Source: Epithemia pelagica | Lineage: Eukaryota > Protista > Bacillariophyta | Assembly: GCA_946965045.2 (NCBI GenBank) | Contig: OX337238.1 | Span: 1,736,001 to 1,800,000 of the forward strand | Reading direction: 5' to 3' | Length of the DNA stretch: 64,000 nt | In this document: in pieces, positions 4,181 through 19,296 of the stretch | Layout: each line of letters starts with the position of its first letter | How positions within the stretch are numbered: position 1 is the stretch's first letter | Position numbers and translations under genes: made by a program | Notes under the pieces: generated by a model | The model's input: only the letters and a program-made list of their open reading frames with translations | Database searches by the model: none | Told to the model about the DNA's origin: nothing

Positions 4181-7100
4181 TCAGCCCATACTGTCGGACA
4201 AGTTGCTATTGTCATTCATTACATCTGCCATGGGATTCATGTAATCCACAGTGAAACCGGCCGTGTAAGTTGCATCGCCTTTTTTCATCTGCTTATTTCT
4301 CATTTCAGCCAGTAGAGCCTGTACAACAGGACTTGTACCATACTTCCCGAACTTTCCTCGTCCATATGACTCGTTTGGAACACTAAACTGACCAACATCA
4401 CCCTCGACAATACCATTTGAGGGTATGAAGTTGGTCAGCATTAGCGCCATGGTTTGTTTTTCCAATGCAGCAGCATCTCTTGTAGTAGTGGCACGTCGGA
4501 TGAGCTCTTCACGCTCGGTGGTTGTCATGGTACTGTTGATCTGTGCCACTGTTACTGCTTGTTGCGTACGCGTCACCTCCTTTTCCAAGACTTGAGCTCG
4601 ATGAACGGCACTTTTTGCCGCTCGTGCCTGTAACCTACGTATAGAAACCTGATAGTCGTGTCCATCCAATTCACTCATGTGATCAAATCGAAACCCAAGT
4701 CCAATACCAAACGTTTTGTAAACGGCCATTCCGAGCGGATCATCATAGATGTTCTGTTCGTAATCCAGATGGTGTTGTTGAGCAATTTGTTCCATAGCCC
4801 TTGATTTCCATGTCGATTGATCGGGCCATGACAACTTGCTTCGACCGTCTGTAGCACTCCGTAAAGCAGTTGTCACGGCGGGATCGATGGCGCTGGCTTC
4901 CATTTGTTCCCTGGTAGCAGACAACGTCGGTGCGACACCTATGGACTCGTTTTCGACCCGCCGTAGAATATGTGGACCATACAATCGAAATTCTTCTTCG
5001 CGGATTGAATCTTGTCCCAACTTCAATCGCTCGTCGACGGTTTTGTACACGGAAAGATAGTATAATAGTCGCATACCAAGGTTACCTATGGATGGTTGTT
5101 GTGTAGGGTCTCTCCACTTGAGATAGCATCGCCATTGAAAACGATGGGGATCGTTGCGGGCAACCAAGTTGAACTCTTCCGGATCCATGGTCAGCGGTAG
5201 ATTGTGCGTATGTCGAATTTGAACCAAACGAGAGAACGCAATCATGTGACCAATGGGACCGACGAGTCCGACAATACTTGCCAGCGCCACGGCCGCAAAC
5301 GAAGTTGGTGGAACAGAACCCCAGGACTGATGCAAAGACGAAACAAATGCACGTCCCCCACATGCAACGTGTCTTGTCAATTCACTGAAACGGGCCGACG
5401 AGGAAAGGAACATGGATTTCAGGTCAATCATCGTCTGAGAGAAAGACATGAAAAGCAGTGAAAGAGCATGTTTTGGGCCATGGTAGTGTATGTTGCACAC
5501 AGAAAGCATGCCAATCCAGACAAATGAAAACAATACAGTCCTTCTCATTATTTGAGCTGGGAAACACGCAATCAAGCTACGACCAACATGAATTGGGGAT
5601 GCATGTAGGATGTTTTGGCGTATCTTGACGAATTTCCGTGGCAATTGTTCACCGGATGCATTCACAGCCCAAATTGCATGGTTCTTGATGTTCCGATCGT
5701 CTTCATGTGAAGACGGCCCTACGGTTGGGACTGGATTCGAGCCTGCCATGGCTGAAACGGAGCTGGAAGTCATACCGCAAGGGGCCCATGCAATCACTCC
5801 CAATATTGTCGCCACAAACACCACTCCTCCCAATACTGCTTCATTGTGCTGTTTGGCCAGACGTATAATTCCCTTGAGTATCACGATGAAAGTGGAGCTG
5901 AAGGTTCCTCCAAGTGCAGAAATTGTCCCAGATCCGGCTCTGGCCAAGCGTTGAAACAATGAGAAACCATGATTGGAAGACAACGAGTGCAAATAAGGGT
6001 CTTTTAAAAGCCCATCCAGAAAGATCTGTAACTGCAAAGACGAAGACGTCGATGCCACCGCCGCGGACGATGAAGTTGCAATGAGGCGATTGTTCCATCC
6101 CATGAAAACCGACATGCCAATTATACCCAGCAGTCCTCCCAGAAAAATCATTCCAAATCGAATCAACTGGCTCAAGGCTCGTTGACGAACCGCTCTATGC
6201 TGCCGCCATTGACGTGCCAGTAATTCGCCTTTAAGGGCGGATAAGAGGGGGTCATTGTCATGACTTGAATACAACCTGTTGTCGGACGTTTTCCCCACCA
6301 GGACTCGTATCGCTGCCACGGTCCAAAAAGTGGTCAGAGCCATTAGGGCGGTGATGGGTATCAAGCGATCCACGCCGCCTCCATTCTCGAAGGGCACCCA
6401 AGACTGCCATTTTTGTATCACCCAGCATATGTAGGGAATGGAGGGCGTTGTCGTGGTGCTGGTGGAGGTAGAAAACAAGTACTGGAGGACTTCGTGTTTG
6501 AGCATGAAACTGCGAGTCCACACGGGCTCAACCAGGTTCAACACAGCCAGGATACTCCCACCAGTCACAACGAGGCAACGAACGAAAATGCGTCCCAAGG
6601 AAACAAGGGCATGGCGTCGTGCCAGCCGCAGCGCCATGGCATCCTTCTGGTCGTCGTCCTCTTTGGTTTGAAAACGGAAACGACGAAGAGGAATTGTAAC
6701 CGACAGGGATGATGGAGGTGATGTTGACATGGACGTAGACGACGAGGTCTTATTAGACAGCGTCGCCGCCGCCGACGGTGGCGGCATGTCCCGTTGGCGT
6801 TGGACCCAATACGACAGGACAATGGTAGGTAGGCCATAAATCATGGTTAGAAAAGCAATTCGTTGTGGCAGACATGATCCGAGTCTTGAAAGTGTGGAGC
6901 TGAGGATCAAGGCCACTTCAATGGCAAGCATCCATGGTATTGTCTTGGGAGTGACTCCACTCAATCGTAGAATTTGTTGCAAGCACCATGTCAAACAGGA
7001 ATAGGGACGATATTGTTGGTGACAAAAGGTAAACCATACCGATTGCCATTGTTGCAAGGACACTGCGGCGCCTACTCGAACCAGAATACGACTGAGCGAC

Positions 7101-11913: not shown

Positions 11914-13868
11914 ATTATTTTCTGTCTTTTTCTAAATCTCCGTGGACGATATGTCAGAAGCCGATGGAAGACGCTTTGTGAAATCAAAGTCCCAAATGAC
12001 TTGTGCGTTTTCTTCTTGATCGAAACGAAAGAAGTGCTCCAAACAAAACACAGCACAAGTCATCCACCGCAAAGAAATTAATGATGATGGCAGGTAGGCT
12101 GGGTATAGTACAACAGTTAACCAGTGACGAGTTCATGGTTCAAACGTCTCACTTTTCGACATAATGAAAGCAGACAGCATACACTAAATTGCATAAATAG
12201 TAGTAAATAGGTCAGAGGTGCGTATGCGATCTGGATTCTCTGGATTCGCGCTGGCCACATGCTATGCGGATAGGAAATCCCGCTGGATCAGCGGACCGCA
12301 TATCTTCAAGCATCCACCGCCAGTCTAGCCAGAGGAGTTAATGTCTAAGTCTACGAGAGCCTCAGGAATCAGGAATAGTACAATAGCTACCTAGCTAGTC
12401 GTCGTAGTCATCCAATGCACGAGGTGGAAAGTAAGACTATTGAAAATTGAAAGACAAGAAATTCCTGTCTTTTTTCAAGAAATGGCGTTCAATGACGCTC
12501 CCAGCACTATTCCAAGGCAATTTGGGTCTAAACGAAGCTTTAATTTAGGCTTCACCACAGCGTATACCGGAGTCACGACGACTCAGTTAATGAAAGGATA
12601 GTGCCCAAAAAGACGGGATGGTTCCCAAAGAGGGTGGTTCATCTCTACTCACAAAATGTATTTAAAGACATGTGTCTCCTCCAGAATCTCATTCTGAGAG
12701 GAATCCTGGTGATCTGCTTCGAGTAGAAGAGTTACAGAAAGAGAGTTCCTTTCATCAGACTGCATTTGTGTTGCTTTTGGCCTTCTAGCATTTGCATAGG
12801 GACAAACATTGCTGGTTATTGAAACATAACCATTGTGTGATGAGGCTTCTTCAGGTGTCATCATTTTCCATCTTTCATAACTCGGTTCTGTTGTAATCGT
12901 CATTTTTCACTCGCTCGCATACAATGTGAAGCTGGGGAGTTCCGACATCCATGTCATGGTGTCTTATTGAGTTATTACAACTAGGAGTAGGTGCAAGAAG
13001 TTCTACATTAGGAGAACTAGCTAGGGACGCCGAAAGACTGGGTTACAAAAAGACTGCCTTTGTTTCGATGGGTGCGGCTCGGATCAGCACAAAATCCAAT
13101 AACTGCAAGTCTCACTAGAAGCTGTTCGGACTAGCGGCTCCCCATAACATGGCAAAGGGGACCCAGGGGACACTTCACACTTACATTTTCTACTTTTCAT
13201 ACTTCTCTACGAGTACGAGCTCGTATTATCTACGAGTATCGAGTATTGAGCATGAAATGGTGGGTGATCGTGGATCTTGTTACTTAAACTTGACCATTGA
13301 AGAAATTGAAAGGGAAGTTGGACCAATGTATTGTTGATAGGATAGTCGATAAGTTACGACCTACGACCGACCAGATTCATCTCCACCTATCACCTATTAG
13401 GAAAGCGTCTTTTTTAGACTTCCCACTTCCCACTTCCCGCTCCACCTCCCACCTCCCACCTCCACTACTCATTACTCTGTACTGTTGTTGTTATGTGTCA
13501 TGTCCTACTACTCGGACCTCGACGACGAGTATGTCCAGAATCCAGACTAGAACGAAGATGACGGGGACTTTTTCGCCCCTCCCCATTCCCCATTCCCCAT
13601 TCCCCATGCGCCCAATGCCCACATGATAATATTATTGTATACTGCATACTCGTACCCTCGTCCCTCGTAGGACAGGAGACATAATACATAATAGATACTA
13701 CTCCTAGCTCCTAGTATTACTACGCGGAAGAGGTTTACTCGTAGTTTTAAGTTTTGATTCGCTGGACTCGATAAACGGCAATGCGGGAATTATGAATTGG
13801 TTGGGAAGGGGTATACCACTTCTTTGAAACTCCTTGGGCTTTCCCGGCCAGGAAGTGGAGACATCATG

Positions 13869-14658
13869 TTAATCATCGTTCTTGTTTCCGAAACGTTCAT
13901 CGAGAACACCATCGTTGTCGAAGGCTGTCGTTGGGATTGCGGCGACATCTTGTCGAAAGACGCAGGAAAATCCAGAATCGCCTGGACTCATATGATACAC
14001 GTTGATAAAGCCGCCCGACGACCCATCACGAAATGTTGCGTATCGAATGGCTTCGACAGCCAAACGTACAGCCTGCTGCTTTGTAAACGAAGGCGACATT
14101 CGGTCTTTGTTTTGTTGCTGGTGACGATCCACAACACCTAAAGCAAACGTACTCCCGGATCCAACTGAAAACATATCACCCTCAATCCGAGTTCCCAGAT
14201 TGTCAACGTAGAAAAGATGAGGGTGCGAGTTCTGACCATCACCATCTTCGTCGTAGCCCATAATCATGCTGCCTACAGACAACTCCAGCCCTCGCATTCC
14301 ATACAAGTAGTTGGAAAGCAACCGGCTTGCGCGTGCCACAGACATTCGTTTTCCTTGAGGATGAAGTGCTTCATACAACGCTGCCTCGGCCGCAAGCTTC
14401 CGAATCCAGTACGAACAGTCTGCCGCACCACCTGCCATTGTACCTAATAGCTTGGGATGTATGGGAAGCACCTTTTGTACTGTTTTGCTTCCGATGAATG
14501 TCCCCAAACTCGCACGAGAGTCCACCGCCACAACAATACCACCCTTCAGTGAGCGAAACAGAATCGACAAAGGTTCAGCGAATCCATAAAATTGTGTCTA
14601 AAACAGGCGATGCCATGACATGGTGACTTACATGATACAGGAATGCAAGAGTGGTAGT
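13869..14658 (-). CDS. PSMB5: Proteasome subunit beta type-5 (chymotrypsin-like), mature domain; exons 14658-14632 and 14543-13869
   Basis: Splicing GTAAGT(14631)...AAG(14544) gives [33 protein letters not shown], with Thr1, Asp17 and Lys33 at canonical spacing. GTMAGGAADC, SVGSGS and RDGSSGG also present. Confidence 0.92.
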
Positions 14659-17600
14659 TCCATGGGCGAACAGTAATGGTGGAGTCGGTTTCCTCATGTC
14701 GATTGGTCCAAATGACTCGATTTTTTGTGAAGGTACTGGATGTGCGCCTAGATGAGATCCACCAATGCTGCATGGAAGTGAACTAGCTTGATTCATCTGC
14801 ACATTGTTCTCGGAAAGTCCATTGTTCTGCCGTTGGCGTAGGTCAAATATTGTGGCAGCCGCAGAAGCACCGTTCACCATCCAAGCCGCAGTCACGAGCA
14901 ACCCGAAAGTCAACATATGTATTCCCTTTCGTTTCACATGTCGTAAATGCGAAGTAGTGCTTATACTATGATAAGGCTTTCGCTCGAATCTTGGACATGA
15001 AGAAGTCATTGAAGGATGACACACGACACCAGTGGCACCTCGGGGGGCACGGTGAAAACTTGTTGTTGAAGCCCCTTTTCTCGTCCAATCGAGTGCTCTT
15101 GAAGAAGAGAAAGAGGCCGTTGGTCGCGTCCATGTGGAAAACCCTCGGGCCATCGCCTTCGTTTGATTCGAGTACTGGGCCGTCTCAGCCGAACCTACCG
15201 ATTCTTTCAAATTTCCAATGCGATTTTGTTTTTGATCCATAACGGAAATGGTGGATCTGGTAGTTCCTCGGTTGACTGGTTTGGCAGCGCGATAGGGGTC
15301 TTTTTCCAACAACGCAGGTAGATTAACCAAACGGCGATCTTCTCGCACAGGTTTCCATGTTGTAACAAACAAAGGGACGTCCACTTCAAATTTCGAATAA
15401 AGCTTACCCATTACCGATCCCGTAGAACCCCTCTCCTTATTCTCGAAGTTTGCAATCTCGGAAGCTTCACCAGGAATTTTTGATTTAATGGTATGAACTC
15501 GTTTCAGTGGGCGCACCGACAAGAGAATCTCAGAGGGCGATGTCGATGGAAGATTGGTTGTACTTCCCCGCCGCGATGACGATGACTGCGACGATTGAGG
15601 AGCATCCGTATTTTGCTCTACCAGTGCAGCATCGTCGGTAACACCCGCAATGGACAAACCTCCTGTGCCCGTCAGTTTCCCACCCTTTCTGTACGCTTTG
15701 ATAATCGATTTGATTCTCGTCTTTCTGTCCTCAGCTTCTTGTCCAGTCCAAACTCTCAAACGTTGTTCCTCTCCCATTTTGGTACTGGATTTCCCTCGAA
15801 TCTCTCGACGTGCATCGGAAACGGCCGTAACAAAGGCCTCCGTCATGAAGGGGTAGTTAATGTACACACAGGTTCCAATGAGATGTTCGGCCATCGATTC
15901 TAACAACATGGATTTTGACATGACCGACTCGGGTAATTCATTACGCATATTCAATAAAGCTGTCTGGTATCGACTTCCCGTACCATGGACATTGACCCTG
16001 ACTAACCGGCGTTTCATTCCAGTGATAGTTCCATCCCGCAGTGTAGGGAGACCGTCCAATGGAATTTCGACATTTGGTTGCAACATGGGCTTAAATCTTG
16101 GTGGATGCATACCTTGACGGGCACTTGTATTCTTGTACCGCCAATGCGATTTGGAAAAGGGCACACGAACTGTTGTGCAGTTTTCCACTCCACCAAACTG
16201 AGGGTATAGCGGATTCAATGGTTCCAATTCACCCACAGAGTCATTCCGCTTAATTGCTTTCTTCTGGTAGTCGACATTCTCGGAACTGTAAAAGACAACG
16301 GCCTGATCAACCGAATTCCGATCAACTTCCTCCTTGGTAAGTTGCCCCTGCTGATTAATTTGAGACGCGGCGTTTCGCAACTTTTGCGAGTCAATAAAGG
16401 GAAGCAACACCACGGCTTCCCAGGGCCATCGCTTCCCATTCATGTCCACCGTAAAGGATTGTGGATAAAACTCAATCAAGGGAGAATCGGCATCTCGCAT
16501 GAGACTGCGGTATGGTTGTGGAAGGATATGCGCATGCGATGCGGGCATACAAGCCAACAATTGCTCAAAGGGCAGAAGCGGTTCGCCCTTTGCAAAGCGA
16601 ATTTCCTTCTTGAGCAAGTGTTCCAGATTGGTTAAATCACTCATCATGGGACCGTAATGGTAGGGATAAAACCATTCCCAACTGGCTGGTTCATCATGGT
16701 AATAGTACTTCAGCGTCCAGACCAGTCCTTCAATGTAGGCCTTGCGCAAAGCCAAGTGCTTGTCCTTGTCAAAGGGTGAAAATCCAAACTTGTCCGCATA
16801 ATAACGACCCTTAAAGTCCTTGTCATCAATGGTATCTTTCATGGCACTCGTGGTCACGTTGTTTGCCATTTTCACGACTTTGTTCTTGTCTTTCTCTTGT
16901 CGATTTTGGTCCTTCTTCTTCTTCTTCTTCTTATTTTTCTCCAATGACACCTCCTCATTGCCTTCAACACTGTCGGTATTCTTGGTTCCTGCTGGATTCT
17001 GGATGGAAAATCGAAATACACGGCCAATGCGATTCAATAATCCTTCTTGTTCGCGTTCATCGTCCTCCTCTTCTTCCATTTTAGATCCCGTCGTGTCGTC
17101 TTCCTCCCGACGACGGGACGTGGCTTGGACTGTGGCCGCTTCCATGACTGAGGTCAAATTAGTGGCCGACAATGACGAGGACATGACAGGGACAAAGTCA
17201 TTGGTCGGATTCTTTCCCCCACTCTGAAGACGACGAGACAATGGCGTGCTTACATCGACCGCCGTTTGAGCGGCCGCTGTTGCCACGGCATTGGCGGCTC
17301 CTTCTGCCACCAATGCTCGATATCGTTCTCGATCAGCCCGTTCTTTGGATTCCAAGATATCATCTTCGGGTGTCATGGAATGCCCCCATTGTGCTTCGAG
17401 ACGACGGATTTGTTCCATATCGGTGGTGGAGTCCTTAAAGGCATGATAATTGGATTCGTACGATCCAATGTGTTGAAAAAAGGCTTGTAAGCGATCGCCG
17501 GAAACAATGGATCCCGCATGCGTCAAGTAGGGCGGCGGGGGAAGAACAAGGTCTTGTTGTTTGTCAGTGCTTTTACGTGATGATTGCTGTTGCTTTTGCC

Positions 17601-19296
17601 GCCTTTTGACTTCTTGCTGGTACTCTTGCATCCATCCCTGTCTCAATTGACGGTAGGAATAAAAGAGTAAATCAAAGGCGTCATCGCCAATGTCCATGGC
17701 CGGTAAGGAAGGCAAAAAGTCATTGCCGACCAAAAAGGTTAAAAAAACAAAATCATCAATTGTTGCTTCCAAGTCGTAGGGGGATTCGGGAACGACATTG
17801 GAAGTACCAAATTCCAAGGCCAAATAATCGCGCAACACATTCATGTGCAAAAATTCAAAATGCGCATTGTGCAAATACAAGGCCAAATCCCAGCGAGCAG
17901 ACGACGCAGTCGCAGGAACAGACGAGGAGGAGACACCTTCTTGATCCTTATCTTCTTCGTCTTTGGTATCATCCTCCGGTCCAAACTGTTCTTCTTCGTA
18001 GTTTGTACGTGCCATGTCAATTCGATTTTGTCGTGCTTGGCGAAGTCGAGGATCAAAAATTACCCGTTCGCGCAAAAGCAGCAAATTTGGTTCATGAGTA
18101 GCCAATCCTAAGACGATTAAATCACCATCTTGTCCGACAATGCAATGACGCAAATTGGGATTGTAATCCTCCAAAGCCTGTTGACAACGAATAAAGTGCA
18201 AAATCTTGTGTTCGCCTTCACCAGGAACATTGGGACCGGAAAAAATGACGGTCAAATCTTTCCAGGCTGGATCGGTCGAGATTTTGCGTTGAATAAAGTG
18301 TTCCAAATGTTGCGTACACCGATCGAAAAAGGGAGTTCCGGGCGTAATTTCATTGGAATGAAAAGGGTGATGTTCGTCCGATTCTGTTTCTCTTTCTTGG
18401 TCGGTAGTAGAAGTTGTAGCCGATGGGTTCTTGGTGTGCTTGGGTTCGTCGTCCTTGTTGCTCGATTGTGAGGATCGTTGAAAGACGAGAGGTTTTTCGG
18501 TGGGCGAATCCATGGATTGTGTTTCAAATTTGCCGGTAAATCGCCAATCCGAATTGGCCGTACGAACCTGCCCTCTGTCATCCTCCTCTGCATTGTCGGT
18601 AGTAAAGGGATCCTTGTCATACGGATCGTCACCCGTGTTCTGTTGTTCCTGCTGCTCTTGCTCTTGTTGCTGCAACCAGTGGGCATCATACACCGTTTGT
18701 TCAATTTCGCCTTCCTTGGCCGATCGATAGCGACGTGCTCGTTGTTGATTGAGTTTGGCTCGAGGTGCGACACCATCAATGGCCAAATAAAGCAATTCAC
18801 GAGGCTGCGCCACATCCTTGACAATACGATCCAAATAATAGCACAAGTCGGCAAAGACGTCTTGTTCGGTTCGTTCGGTTGGTGGTGGTATCTCTGAGTC
18901 GGTCAAGATGGAGTCGAGGAGTGCCTCGGCTCGTTGGTCGCTAGTGCTGCTACTTGTTGTCGTTTTTTCAGCATTGTTATTGTGCGAACACCCATGAATG
19001 AATCCATTCATATCAATGTACAAACGATCAATGGGAGGAGGAAAGTGCCCACTGCAAGTCGACAATGGATCGGGAGGTGGCATGTACGTGCCTGGAAAGG
19101 GCAAGGGTGGAGAGGGAGGTGAATGATGGGAATTCGCGTCGTTGTCCTCGGCATTCCATTCCTCCTTCTCCTCCTGTTTCCCCTCCTCGTCTGGATAATG
19201 CTCTTGATAGGTTTCCGGTGACACACGTGATCCATGACGTTGAACCGTCAAGGGATAACGTTCGGACAACCAACGAAAAAATTTGGGAATGCCCAT
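14632..19296 (-). CDS. XRN1: XRN1-like 5'-3' exoribonuclease, in frame with the beta5 propeptide and Thr1
   Basis: MGIPKFFRWLSERYP, DRLYIDMNGFIHGCSH, AIDGVAPRAKLNQQRARRY, ITPGTP, PGEGEHKI, GQDGDLIVLGL, DDFVFLTFLVGNDFLP, YIEGLVWTLKYYY, SWEWFYPYHYGP, FYP..F.VDMNGKRWPWEAVVLLPFID, plus a D1-like segment (LIG..VYINYPFM.EA.V.AVSD). Confidence 0.93.

What the first reader, a model, noticed from the sequence alone, without database searches (positions are those of the whole stretch)
13869..19296. XRN1 exoribonuclease fused in frame to a catalytically complete proteasome beta5: a candidate self-cleaving RNase-protease polyprotein
Seen: the 1573-aa XRN ORF has no stop before [14 protein letters not shown]. 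That is followed immediately by a consensus GTAAGT donor (14631). An 88-nt intron ending AAG (14544) joins phase-0 to [12 protein letters not shown]. The junction puts Thr1, Asp17 and Lys33 at exact beta5 spacing, and SVGSGS and RDGSSGG are retained. Predicted product: 1555+224 = 1779 aa. Established: beta subunits are Ntn hydrolases that autocleave at Gly(-1)/Thr1, normally during 20S assembly, and known propeptides are tens of residues. Inference: here the propeptide would be a 1546-aa XRN1, either released on maturation (stoichiometric co-production) or tethered to assembling proteasomes, physically linking RNA decay and proteolysis. Caveat: so large a pro-region may block assembly.
Basis: partly seen in the sequence, partly recalled or inferred. 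Interest (0 to 1): 0.92.

Follow-up and report, generated by a model that had tools for sequence, protein, structure and literature searches.

The report
Diatom XRN1 fused to signal-peptide proteasome beta5
One diatom gene, conserved in most diatom lineages sampled, encodes an RNA-degrading enzyme (XRN1) followed in frame by a buried secretion signal and a proteasome protease subunit, so one message probably makes a cytosolic RNase and a protease subunit sent into the plastid's outer compartment.

Summary
A minus-strand ORF (19296-14632) encodes an intact XRN1-type exoribonuclease. It runs without a stop into ...FAHG|TTT, and an 88-nt GT..AG intron joins it in phase to a proteasome beta5 domain, giving 1779 aa. 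One spliced RNA contig covers about 3.9 kb of the XRN ORF, the exact junction, beta5 and the 3' UTR. DNA runs show no indels.

The fusion is ancient. 136 long proteins carry a beta5 domain, and nearly all of the 120 listed also carry XRN domains. They come from pennate and centric diatoms, Corethron and Rhizosolenia included.

The interpretation needs revision. This beta5 is not the canonical cytosolic type. It belongs to a fast-evolving clade, with a brown alga inside it. Unfused members of that clade, including two verified stand-alone genes, start with a textbook N-terminal signal peptide. In all 129 fusions analysed the same positively charged, hydrophobic, small-residue element lies 50-100 aa before Thr1, with no conserved Met.

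Diatoms are reported to have a periplastid 20S proteasome for which no beta5 was found. My best reading is cytosolic XRN1, an internal signal peptide and a periplastid-type beta5, separated at the ER membrane, with beta5 then maturing by Gly/Thr autolysis. I found no paper describing the fusion. No second, canonical diatom beta5 was found.

The parts
13869..19296 (-). Whole coding region of the XRN1-signal peptide-beta5 fusion gene (two exons, 1779 aa plus stop)
   Evidence: spliced RNA contig.
15292..19296 (-). XRN1-type 5'-3' exoribonuclease, aa 1-1335. It starts MGIPKFFRWLSERYP and ends at the conserved LLEKDPY block.
   Evidence: Pfam XRN_N, XRN_M and XRN1_D1. The active-site blocks DRLYIDMNG, AIDGVAPRAK..NQQR, GEGEHK, GQDGDL and GNDFLP align to solved Xrn1/Xrn2 structures.
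14941..15291 (-). Ser/Thr/Arg-rich linker of low complexity (aa 1336-1452). In homologues it is poorly conserved, 157-394 aa long where measured, but always in frame.
   Evidence: AlphaFold2 gives pLDDT about 45-59 and no secondary structure for the equivalent region of P0008.
14854..14940 (-). Internal signal-peptide-like element. The basic n-region HVKRKGIH is at 14940-14917 and the hydrophobic/small-residue h+c region MLTFGLLVTAAWMVNGASAAA is at 14916-14854.
   Evidence: In 129 fusions the 10 aa before the hydrophobic stretch carry net +2 to +5 in every case. The uncharged stretch has a median of 20 aa and ends A/G/S-rich. The homologous element sits at the N-terminus of unfused orthologues.
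14659..14853 (-). Pro-region between the signal-like element and Thr1 (aa 1482-1546), ending in the conserved PPL(E/L)FAHG
   Evidence: About half of the homologues carry an [RK]GG(D/E) motif 25-35 aa before Thr1; here it is degenerate (SIGGS).
14656..14661 (-). Gly-1 | Thr1 autolysis site (Thr1 = aa 1547, codon 14658-14656)
   Evidence: Gly-1 and Thr1 are invariant in 130/130 long homologues and His-2 in 129/130.
14544..14631 (-). 88-nt phase-0 intron (GTAAGT...AAG) between TTTLAFLYH and [12 protein letters not shown]
   Evidence: Skipped exactly in the X5 RNA contig and kept in the X2 and X4 contigs that span it. A relative (L008) has an intron at the same position, GTACGT...CAG.
13869..14543 (-). 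Exon 2: the rest of the beta5 Ntn-hydrolase domain (Asp17 at 14522-14520, Lys33 at 14474-14472, SVGSGS, RDGSSGG) and the stop codon at 13871-13869
   Evidence: Pfam PF00227 at 4e-34. The beta5-type S1 pocket residues Ala20, Met45, Ala49 and Cys52 can be read directly from the sequence.
13682..13868 (-). 3' untranslated region, up to the end of the RNA contig
   Evidence: X5 record 15 ends at 13682.

Best explanation
This is a conserved diatom gene fusion. An intact, presumably cytosolic, XRN1-type exoribonuclease is joined through a disordered linker to an internal ER signal peptide, a short pro-region and a catalytically complete proteasome beta5. That beta5 belongs to a signal-peptide-bearing clade found in heterokont algae, and is probably the periplastid beta5 missing from the reported diatom periplastid 20S proteasome. 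Proposed mechanism: XRN1 is translated in the cytosol. When the basic-hydrophobic-small-residue element emerges, the ribosome is targeted to the (chloroplast-)ER and the C-terminal part is translocated. Signal peptidase then separates the two halves. XRN1 is left on the cytosolic face, perhaps anchored by the signal sequence. Pro-beta5 is left in the lumen, from where it reaches the periplastidal compartment and matures by Gly-1/Thr1 autolysis during 20S assembly. Shown here: the fusion, its splicing, its presence on one RNA contig, its conservation, the catalytic residues, membership of a clade whose stand-alone members have N-terminal signal peptides, and conservation of the internal signal-like element. 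Inferred: ER targeting from an internal position, cleavage by signal peptidase, the periplastid destination, and the existence of a separate canonical cytosolic beta5.
For: Gene model and RNA. Conservation: 136 proteins of at least 784 aa have a beta5 domain at E<=1e-20, and nearly all of the 120 listed also carry XRN domains. Named species include Cylindrotheca, Fistulifera, Nitzschia, Seminavis, Mayamaea, Amphora, Pseudo-nitzschia, Detonula, Conticribra, Skeletonema, Thalassiosira, Rhizosolenia and Corethron, several from MMETSP transcriptome assemblies. The Conticribra genome has one continuous frame. Catalytic residues are invariant. In the 125-row tree, a clade of 59 rows (support 95) joins the diatom sequences (35 rows, support 99) to 24 unfused sequences, among them a brown alga. 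All 19 of those with at least 60 aa upstream of Thr1 have a hydrophobic N-terminal segment, and nearly all start with a classic signal peptide. Among the other 66 rows only 2 have any such segment (Fisher test). Verified stand-alone genes with an N-terminal signal peptide exist: Leptocylindrus (in-frame stops upstream, no XRN within 15-21 kb) and L004. The internal element has the n-h-c design in 129/129 fusions. A nearby Met occurs in 47%, which matches the roughly 44% I estimate by hand for about 2% Met in the linker, so independent initiation is not conserved. Linker lengths vary while the frame is always kept. The clade diverges fast from canonical beta5. AlphaFold2 does not pack the segment onto beta5. 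Literature: Phaeodactylum tricornutum has periplastid-targeted 20S subunits alpha2, alpha7 (two), beta2, beta3, beta6 and beta7, but no beta5 was found (PMC3101018; PMC5756292).
Against: No signal-peptide predictor could be run; the call rests on charge, hydrophobicity and small-residue statistics. The segment after the signal-like element is not a classic positively charged transit-peptide-like sequence: median net charge is 0 over the first 25 aa and -3 over the last 30 aa. The periplastid destination therefore rests on the published localisation of other 20S subunits, not on this sequence. RNA support in this organism is one assembled contig, which cannot exclude a shorter beta5-only transcript. 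The sample of long proteins was selected for length, so the always-in-frame result is partly by construction. Some diatom lineages have unfused or ambiguous arrangements.
Confidence: 0.55

Rival explanations
1. Two products from two messages. The long ORF exists, but functional signal-peptide-beta5 is made from a shorter transcript or an internal start codon just upstream of the hydrophobic segment. In this window a Met directly precedes it. The XRN1 message simply reads on into beta5.
For: In this window Met1461 sits at the start of the hydrophobic stretch. Short beta5 sequences flagged 'complete' in MMETSP exist, for example Thalassionema P0081 and P0063. In L002, XRN and an M-started signal-peptide-beta5 are adjacent but separated by a 155-nt stop-rich spacer. 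X5 contig depth is higher over the 3' part (24 against 6).
Against: A Met near the element occurs in 47% of fusions, the same as my hand estimate for chance. Many fusions have no Met for more than 30 residues upstream. The linker varies from 157 to 394 aa and is poorly conserved, yet it is in frame in every long homologue and in the genomic loci checked. That is hard to explain unless beta5 translation depends on the XRN1 start. One 'short' hit that I checked (L001) was an ORF open to the 5' end of its contig, so it is a fragment of a fusion. The depth difference fits 3' bias equally well.
Confidence: 0.2
2. One reading: a cytosolic self-cleaving polyprotein. The fused beta5 is the cell's ordinary cytosolic beta5, the hydrophobic segment is only a propeptide feature, and XRN1 with the linker is released by Gly-1/Thr1 autolysis during 20S assembly, or stays tethered to it.
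For: The Gly-1/Thr1 site and the full catalytic set are invariant. No second diatom beta5 turned up among the 120 best hits listed.
Against: Stand-alone orthologues carry the hydrophobic segment at their very N-terminus behind basic residues, which is a signal peptide and would export a cytosolic subunit. The clade is much more divergent than canonical beta5s. A folded protein of about 150 kDa attached to the propeptide is topologically awkward for joining two half-proteasomes (established knowledge of 20S assembly). Only 120 of 2584 hits could be inspected, so the absence of a second beta5 there is weak evidence.
Confidence: 0.12
3. An uncleaved type II membrane protein. The internal element is a signal anchor and is not cut, so XRN1 on the cytosolic face stays covalently linked to the luminal pro-beta5 until Thr1 autolysis.
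For: The uncharged stretch is fairly long (median 20 aa), which is within signal-anchor range.
Against: The stretch is Ala/Gly/Ser-rich and ends in small residues like a cleavable signal. The stand-alone orthologues look like ordinary cleavable signal peptides. Import into the periplastid space would be blocked by a membrane tether.
Confidence: 0.08
4. An assembly or annotation artefact: two neighbouring genes joined by a sequencing error or by chance.
For: None found.
Against: None of four runs of this organism shows an indel anywhere in the gene, and those whose contigs reach the linker read it unchanged. A spliced RNA contig spans the junction. The same fusion occurs in more than 100 independent sequences, and in a relative with the same intron position.
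Confidence: 0.01

Closest known systems
Periplastid ('symbiont-specific') 20S proteasome subunits of diatoms (Moog et al. 2011, PMC3101018)
   Same: These are nucleus-encoded proteasome core subunits that carry a signal peptide and are sent to the periplastidal compartment of a heterokont alga. The beta5 here belongs to a clade that contains a brown alga and diatoms, and the unfused members of that clade have N-terminal signal peptides.
   Different: No beta5 was reported in that set. Here the signal peptide lies about 1460 residues inside a protein that starts with XRN1, so a screen of N-terminal targeting signals would miss it. The post-signal segment is not clearly transit-peptide-like, and localisation is untested.
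Canonical proteasome beta5 (PSMB5 / yeast Pre2), an Ntn hydrolase with a propeptide of tens of residues
   Same: PF00227 fold; Gly-1/Thr1 autolysis site; Asp17 and Lys33; the SVGSGS and RDGSSGG blocks; beta5-type pocket residues Ala20, Met45, Ala49 and Cys52.
   Different: About 51% identical to canonical beta5s, against about 67% among canonical ones. The canonical motifs KKVIEIN, FWER and GWD are replaced by QKVLPI, FWIR and G(F/Y)D. It is preceded by a signal-peptide-like element and, in diatoms, by a whole XRN1.
XRN1 / Pacman / Kem1 cytoplasmic 5'-3' exoribonuclease
   Same: XRN_N, XRN_M and the Xrn1-type D1 domain; the N-terminus starts at the catalytic domain; all acidic active-site blocks are present.
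   Different: It has large low-complexity insertions in XRN_N. Its C-terminal tail runs on into a signal peptide and a proteasome subunit instead of ending.
Viral polyproteins with internal signal peptides, such as flavivirus capsid-anchor-prM and hepacivirus core-E1 (from my own knowledge, not tested here)
   Same: A cytosolic N-terminal protein is followed by an internal hydrophobic signal that translocates the downstream protein and is cut by host signal peptidase. The upstream protein is left at the membrane.
   Different: Those are viral. This would be a cellular gene conserved across an algal phylum, and the cleavage has not been shown.
Ubiquitin-ribosomal protein fusions (UBA52, RPS27A), which are cellular polyproteins (from my own knowledge)
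   Same: One ORF is processed into two unrelated functional proteins made in fixed 1:1 amounts.
   Different: Those are cut by deubiquitinases in the cytosol. Here separation would be by membrane targeting, signal peptidase and Thr1 autolysis.

Membership tests
Proteasome beta subunit, T1 Ntn hydrolase (beta5 type) | PF00227 fold | tested here: met
   Pfam E=4e-34. The AlphaFold2 model of homologue P0008 has pLDDT mostly 86-97 over most of the domain.
Proteasome beta subunit, T1 Ntn hydrolase (beta5 type) | Gly-1/Thr1 autolysis site with Asp17 and Lys33 at the canonical spacing | tested here: met
   for the window. Invariant in 128-130 of 130 homologues.
Proteasome beta subunit, T1 Ntn hydrolase (beta5 type) | beta5-type S1 pocket (Ala20, Met45, Ala49, Cys52) | tested here: met
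   Read directly from the spliced sequence. TMAGGAADC is invariant in alignment A1.
Proteasome beta subunit, T1 Ntn hydrolase (beta5 type) | Actual autolysis and incorporation into a 20S particle | not testable with these tools
   Needs protein work (N-terminal mass spectrometry, a Thr1Ala mutant).
Canonical cytosolic beta5 orthologue (PSMB5/Pre2) | Groups with the canonical beta5s of other eukaryotes and keeps their conserved motifs | tested here: not met
   It falls in a separate clade (support 95-99) together with signal-peptide-bearing sequences. Identity to canonical beta5s is 51.5% against 67% among them. The motifs differ.
XRN1-type 5'-3' exoribonuclease | XRN_N and XRN_M plus the Xrn1 D1 domain | tested here: met
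   Pfam 1e-78, 6e-83 and 7e-10.
XRN1-type 5'-3' exoribonuclease | Conserved acidic active-site blocks | tested here: met
   The blocks are aligned to solved Xrn2/Xrn1 chains; coordinates.
Cleavable ER signal peptide | Basic n-region, hydrophobic h-region and a c-region of small residues | tested here: met
   Net +2 to +5 in 129/129; uncharged stretch with a median of 20 aa; A/G/S-rich end. The homologous element is N-terminal in stand-alone genes.
Cleavable ER signal peptide | Recognition and cleavage from an internal position | not testable with these tools
   No predictor or assay was available; this is inferred.
Periplastid (PPC) bipartite targeting signal of diatoms | Signal peptide followed by a non-aromatic +1 residue | tested here: inconclusive
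   The residues around the end of the uncharged stretch are mostly A, S, V, I, G and then D, E, K or R, but the exact cleavage site was not predicted.
Periplastid (PPC) bipartite targeting signal of diatoms | Transit-peptide-like part with a net positive charge | tested here: inconclusive
   Median net charge is 0 over the first 25 aa and -3 over the last 30 aa. This is not clearly transit-peptide-like.
Periplastid (PPC) bipartite targeting signal of diatoms | Localisation in the periplastidal compartment | not testable with these tools
   Only literature precedent for other 20S subunits is available (PMC3101018).

The most novel reading that the evidence does not exclude
This would be a cellular 'polyprotein' split by the secretory machinery. 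In most diatoms, one ribosome run would make a cytosolic XRN1 that ends in, and may be anchored to the chloroplast-ER by, an internal signal peptide. It would also make the missing catalytic beta5 of the periplastid proteasome, delivered across the membrane. Cytosolic mRNA decay would then be coupled 1:1 in synthesis and in place to protein turnover in the relict endosymbiont cytoplasm.
Probability: 0.4. Interest if true: 0.88.

Novelty: new variant of a known kind. Interest (0 to 1): 0.78.

Why it matters
1. It may supply the catalytic beta5 that was missing from the 'minimal' periplastid proteasome of diatoms. It also explains why screens of N-terminal targeting signals missed it.

2. If the internal signal works as proposed, this is, to my knowledge, an arrangement otherwise familiar from viral polyproteins: one ORF yielding a cytosolic enzyme and a translocated protein. 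It can be tested directly in transformable diatoms.

3. It suggests that diatom XRN1 may sit on the chloroplast-ER membrane, which bears on where mRNAs are degraded.

4. The fusion is a rare genomic change. It is present in Corethron, Rhizosolenia, Thalassiosirales and pennates, and absent at the verified Leptocylindrus locus, so it could be used as a marker for early diatom branching.

5. Annotation pipelines split or misname this gene. The public model of a near-identical sequence (P0001) reads through the intron and lacks the proteasome domain.

Tried and rejected
1. I looked for a separate canonical diatom beta5. The 120 best short hits held none with a diatom name. The candidate 'IK(M/F)NHG' group clusters with Paulinella (Rhizaria). 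P0158 and P0122 group with the red alga Porphyridium, and a plastid protein on their contig lacks a signal peptide. Cluster look-ups, Atlas searches and notes of this scan gave no names. This question stays open.

2. 'Short' beta5 hits as evidence for stand-alone genes. L001 turned out to be an ORF open to the contig's 5' end, so it is a fragment of a fusion. Only Leptocylindrus and L004 were verified as stand-alone.

3. L002 as a pre-fusion state. XRN and beta5 are separated by a stop-rich 155-nt spacer, but several in-frame GT..AG pairs, for example a 251-nt intron, could join them. I left this ambiguous.

4. A conserved internal start codon: rejected, because Met frequency near the element equals my chance estimate.

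5. The hydrophobic segment as a structural part of the propeptide: AlphaFold2 leaves it unstructured and unpacked. This is weak evidence.

6. Extra RNA evidence: a second run search found no further RNA runs of this organism, and environmental runs hold only fragments of 170-330 nt.

7. Literature: five term combinations aimed at the fusion, over about 8.4 million full texts, found no description of an XRN-proteasome fusion.

8. A crude motif classifier for canonical against divergent types misfiled Rhizaria. The tree is the better basis.

Full report
**1. The observation**

The minus strand carries an ORF from 19296 to 14575 (1573 aa). It starts MGIPKFFRWLSERYP and contains XRN_N, XRN_M and XRN1_D1. 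All XRN active-site blocks are present and align to solved Xrn1/Xrn2 chains. The ORF runs without a stop into ...[17 protein letters not shown], directly followed by GTAAGT. Eighty-eight bases later...CACTGAAG is followed by [12 protein letters not shown]....

Joining 19296-14632 to 14543-13869 gives 1779 aa with one terminal stop. Exon 2 is a Proteasome domain (4e-34). Thr1 is aa 1547, Asp17 and Lys33 are at the exact spacing, and the beta5-type pocket residues are present.

Contigs of four runs of this organism were laid on the gene. X2 (whole gene) and X4 (across the intron) are colinear with the window; X3's listed contigs cover only the 5' half. X5 has one 4771-nt contig that runs 18534->14631, skips exactly the 88 bases, and continues to 13682. 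No run shows an indel. A relative (L008) has an intron at the identical position.

**2. The fusion is old and widespread**

A search with the linker region returned 40 proteins, and 38 of them combine XRN domains with PF00227. A search restricted to long proteins, scored on the beta5 part, found 136 at E<=1e-20. Nearly all of the 120 listed combine XRN domains with Proteasome.

- Raphid pennates: Cylindrotheca, Fistulifera, Nitzschia, Seminavis, Mayamaea, Amphora, Pseudo-nitzschia.
- Thalassiosirales: Detonula, Conticribra, Skeletonema, Thalassiosira.
- Others: Ditylum, Rhizosolenia and Corethron.

Several come from MMETSP transcriptome assemblies. In the Conticribra genome the frame is continuous.

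In 130 long homologues Gly-1 and Thr1 are invariant, His-2 is present in 129, and Asp17 and Lys33 in 128. The linker is poorly conserved and, where I could measure it, 157-394 aa long, yet it is always in frame. The sample was chosen for length, which weakens this last point. The genomic cases checked agree with it.

**3. What changed my reading**

Every fusion has a conserved element 50-100 aa before Thr1. It usually reads R-G-R, then about 20 uncharged, Ala/Gly/Ser/Leu/Phe-rich residues ending in small residues. In 129 of 129 fusions the ten preceding residues carry net +2 to +5. This is the n-h-c design of an ER signal peptide.

A Met lies nearby in 47% of them. With about 2% Met in the linker I estimate roughly 44% by chance, so an internal start is not conserved.

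Orthologues that are not fused carry this element at their very N-terminus:

- Leptocylindrus: genomic loci L005 and L006 have in-frame stops upstream, different neighbours and no XRN motif within 15-21 kb. MMETSP transcripts agree.
- L004: an adenylate kinase gene lies upstream on the other strand.

An exhaustive HMMER search and a 125-row tree show a clade of 59 rows (support 95). It consists of the diatom sequences (35 rows, support 99; fusions occur only here) and 24 stand-alone sequences that include a brown alga. All 19 of these with at least 60 aa upstream of Thr1 have a hydrophobic N-terminal segment, and nearly all open with a textbook signal peptide. Among the 66 rows outside the clade only two have any such segment.

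The clade is also divergent. It is 51.5% identical to canonical beta5s, while canonical beta5s of red algae, streptophytes, fungi and Rhizaria share 67%. The canonical motifs are replaced. AlphaFold2 models the beta5 domain with confidence but leaves the linker, signal-like element and pro-region unstructured and unpacked.

**4. Link to published work**

Moog et al. (PMC3101018) found in Phaeodactylum tricornutum periplastid-targeted versions of 20S subunits alpha2, alpha7 (two), beta2, beta3, beta6 and beta7. They localised several of them and found no beta5. Cavalier-Smith (PMC5756292) refers to a degenerate heterokont periplastid proteasome.

A beta5 clade with signal peptides, found in a brown alga and diatoms, fits that missing subunit. 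A signal buried behind XRN1 would escape a screen of N-terminal signals. My data support the targeting-like nature of the segment but not a conserved separate start.

**5. Mechanism proposed**

XRN1 is made in the cytosol. The internal signal then brings the ribosome to the (chloroplast-)ER, and the C-terminal part is translocated. Signal peptidase separates the halves. Pro-beta5 goes on to the periplastid space and matures by Gly/Thr autolysis. XRN1 stays on the cytosolic side, possibly membrane-anchored.

Everything after 'the element looks like a signal peptide' is inference. Large cytosolic N-terminal domains ahead of a first membrane-inserted segment are known in cellular proteins, and internal cleaved signals are known in viral polyproteins (my own knowledge).

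Weak points:
- No predictor was run.
- The post-signal segment is not positively charged like a classic transit-peptide-like sequence.
- I could not show the second, canonical beta5 that this reading requires.
- RNA support is at contig level only, and extra runs gave nothing.

**6. Rivals**

- A beta5-only message or internal start: 0.2.
- An uncleaved type II membrane protein: 0.08.
- An artefact: 0.01.

**7. Novelty**

The sequences are public and automatically named, for example '5'-3' exonuclease/20S proteasome alpha/beta subunit' and 'proteasome endopeptidase complex'. Five full-text searches aimed at the fusion found no paper that describes it. I rate it a new variant of known kinds (gene fusion or polyprotein; periplastid proteasome subunit), with high interest because the architecture is unusual and directly testable.

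Noticed in passing
window 18257-18725 (XRN_N low-complexity insertion, about aa 190-346): Contigs of runs X2, X3 and X4 include a form in which 467 nt are replaced by 209 other letters. The difference is 258 nt, or 86 codons, so this looks like an in-frame length polymorphism or second haplotype in the acidic insertion of the XRN domain. A cluster of SNPs lies next to it at 18490-18603.
   Followed up: no
pro-region of homologues, 25-35 aa before Thr1 (window equivalent 14755-14769, degenerate SIGGS): About half of the fusions and many stand-alone orthologues carry a (L/I/M)-[RK]-G-G-(D/E) motif reminiscent of the ubiquitin C-terminus LRGG. It could mark a second processing site, for example removal of a targeting part, or a contact site. 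It is unexplained.
   Followed up: partly
linkers of P0004, P0006, P0009, P0013 and P0229: Some diatom fusions carry SAP domains (PF02037), and P0009 and P0013 also carry PF13297, in the linker between XRN1 and the signal-like element. This argues that the linker is translated and can hold nucleic-acid-binding modules.
   Followed up: no
L002:5900-6700 (Logan contig; also L003): The XRN ORF ends 155 nt before an M-started signal-peptide-beta5 ORF, with stops in all frames between them. Several in-frame GT..AG pairs, for example 6100..6350, could splice them together. This is either a tandem unfused state or a fusion through an intron.
   Followed up: partly
L004:1655-3528 and L005/L006 (stand-alone signal-peptide-beta5 genes): In the beta5 trees, the stand-alone L004 gene nests among Bacillariaceae-like fusions, and Leptocylindrus groups with Rhizosolenia. 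This hints at secondary fission events as well as a possibly primitive unfused state. Support on a 211-column alignment is modest.
   Followed up: partly
tree, 10-row clade (P0372, P0356, P0393, P0389, P0299, P0386, P0342, P0343, P0361, P0351): A second long-stemmed beta5-like clade (support 100) is sister to the signal-peptide clade. Nine of its ten members lack a hydrophobic N-terminal segment. Its origin and identity are unknown.
   Followed up: no
P0001 versus the window: The public model of a near-identical sequence (ENA, contig of 1.07 Mb) starts at an internal Met, reads through the intron to a stop and lacks the proteasome domain. It differs from the window at several residues, so it may be a different strain or haplotype.
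   Followed up: no
L008:6577-8808: A DDE_Tnp_1_7 (piggyBac-type) transposase ORF of 743 aa lies about 5.6 kb from the beta5 exon in the closest relative's contig.
   Followed up: no
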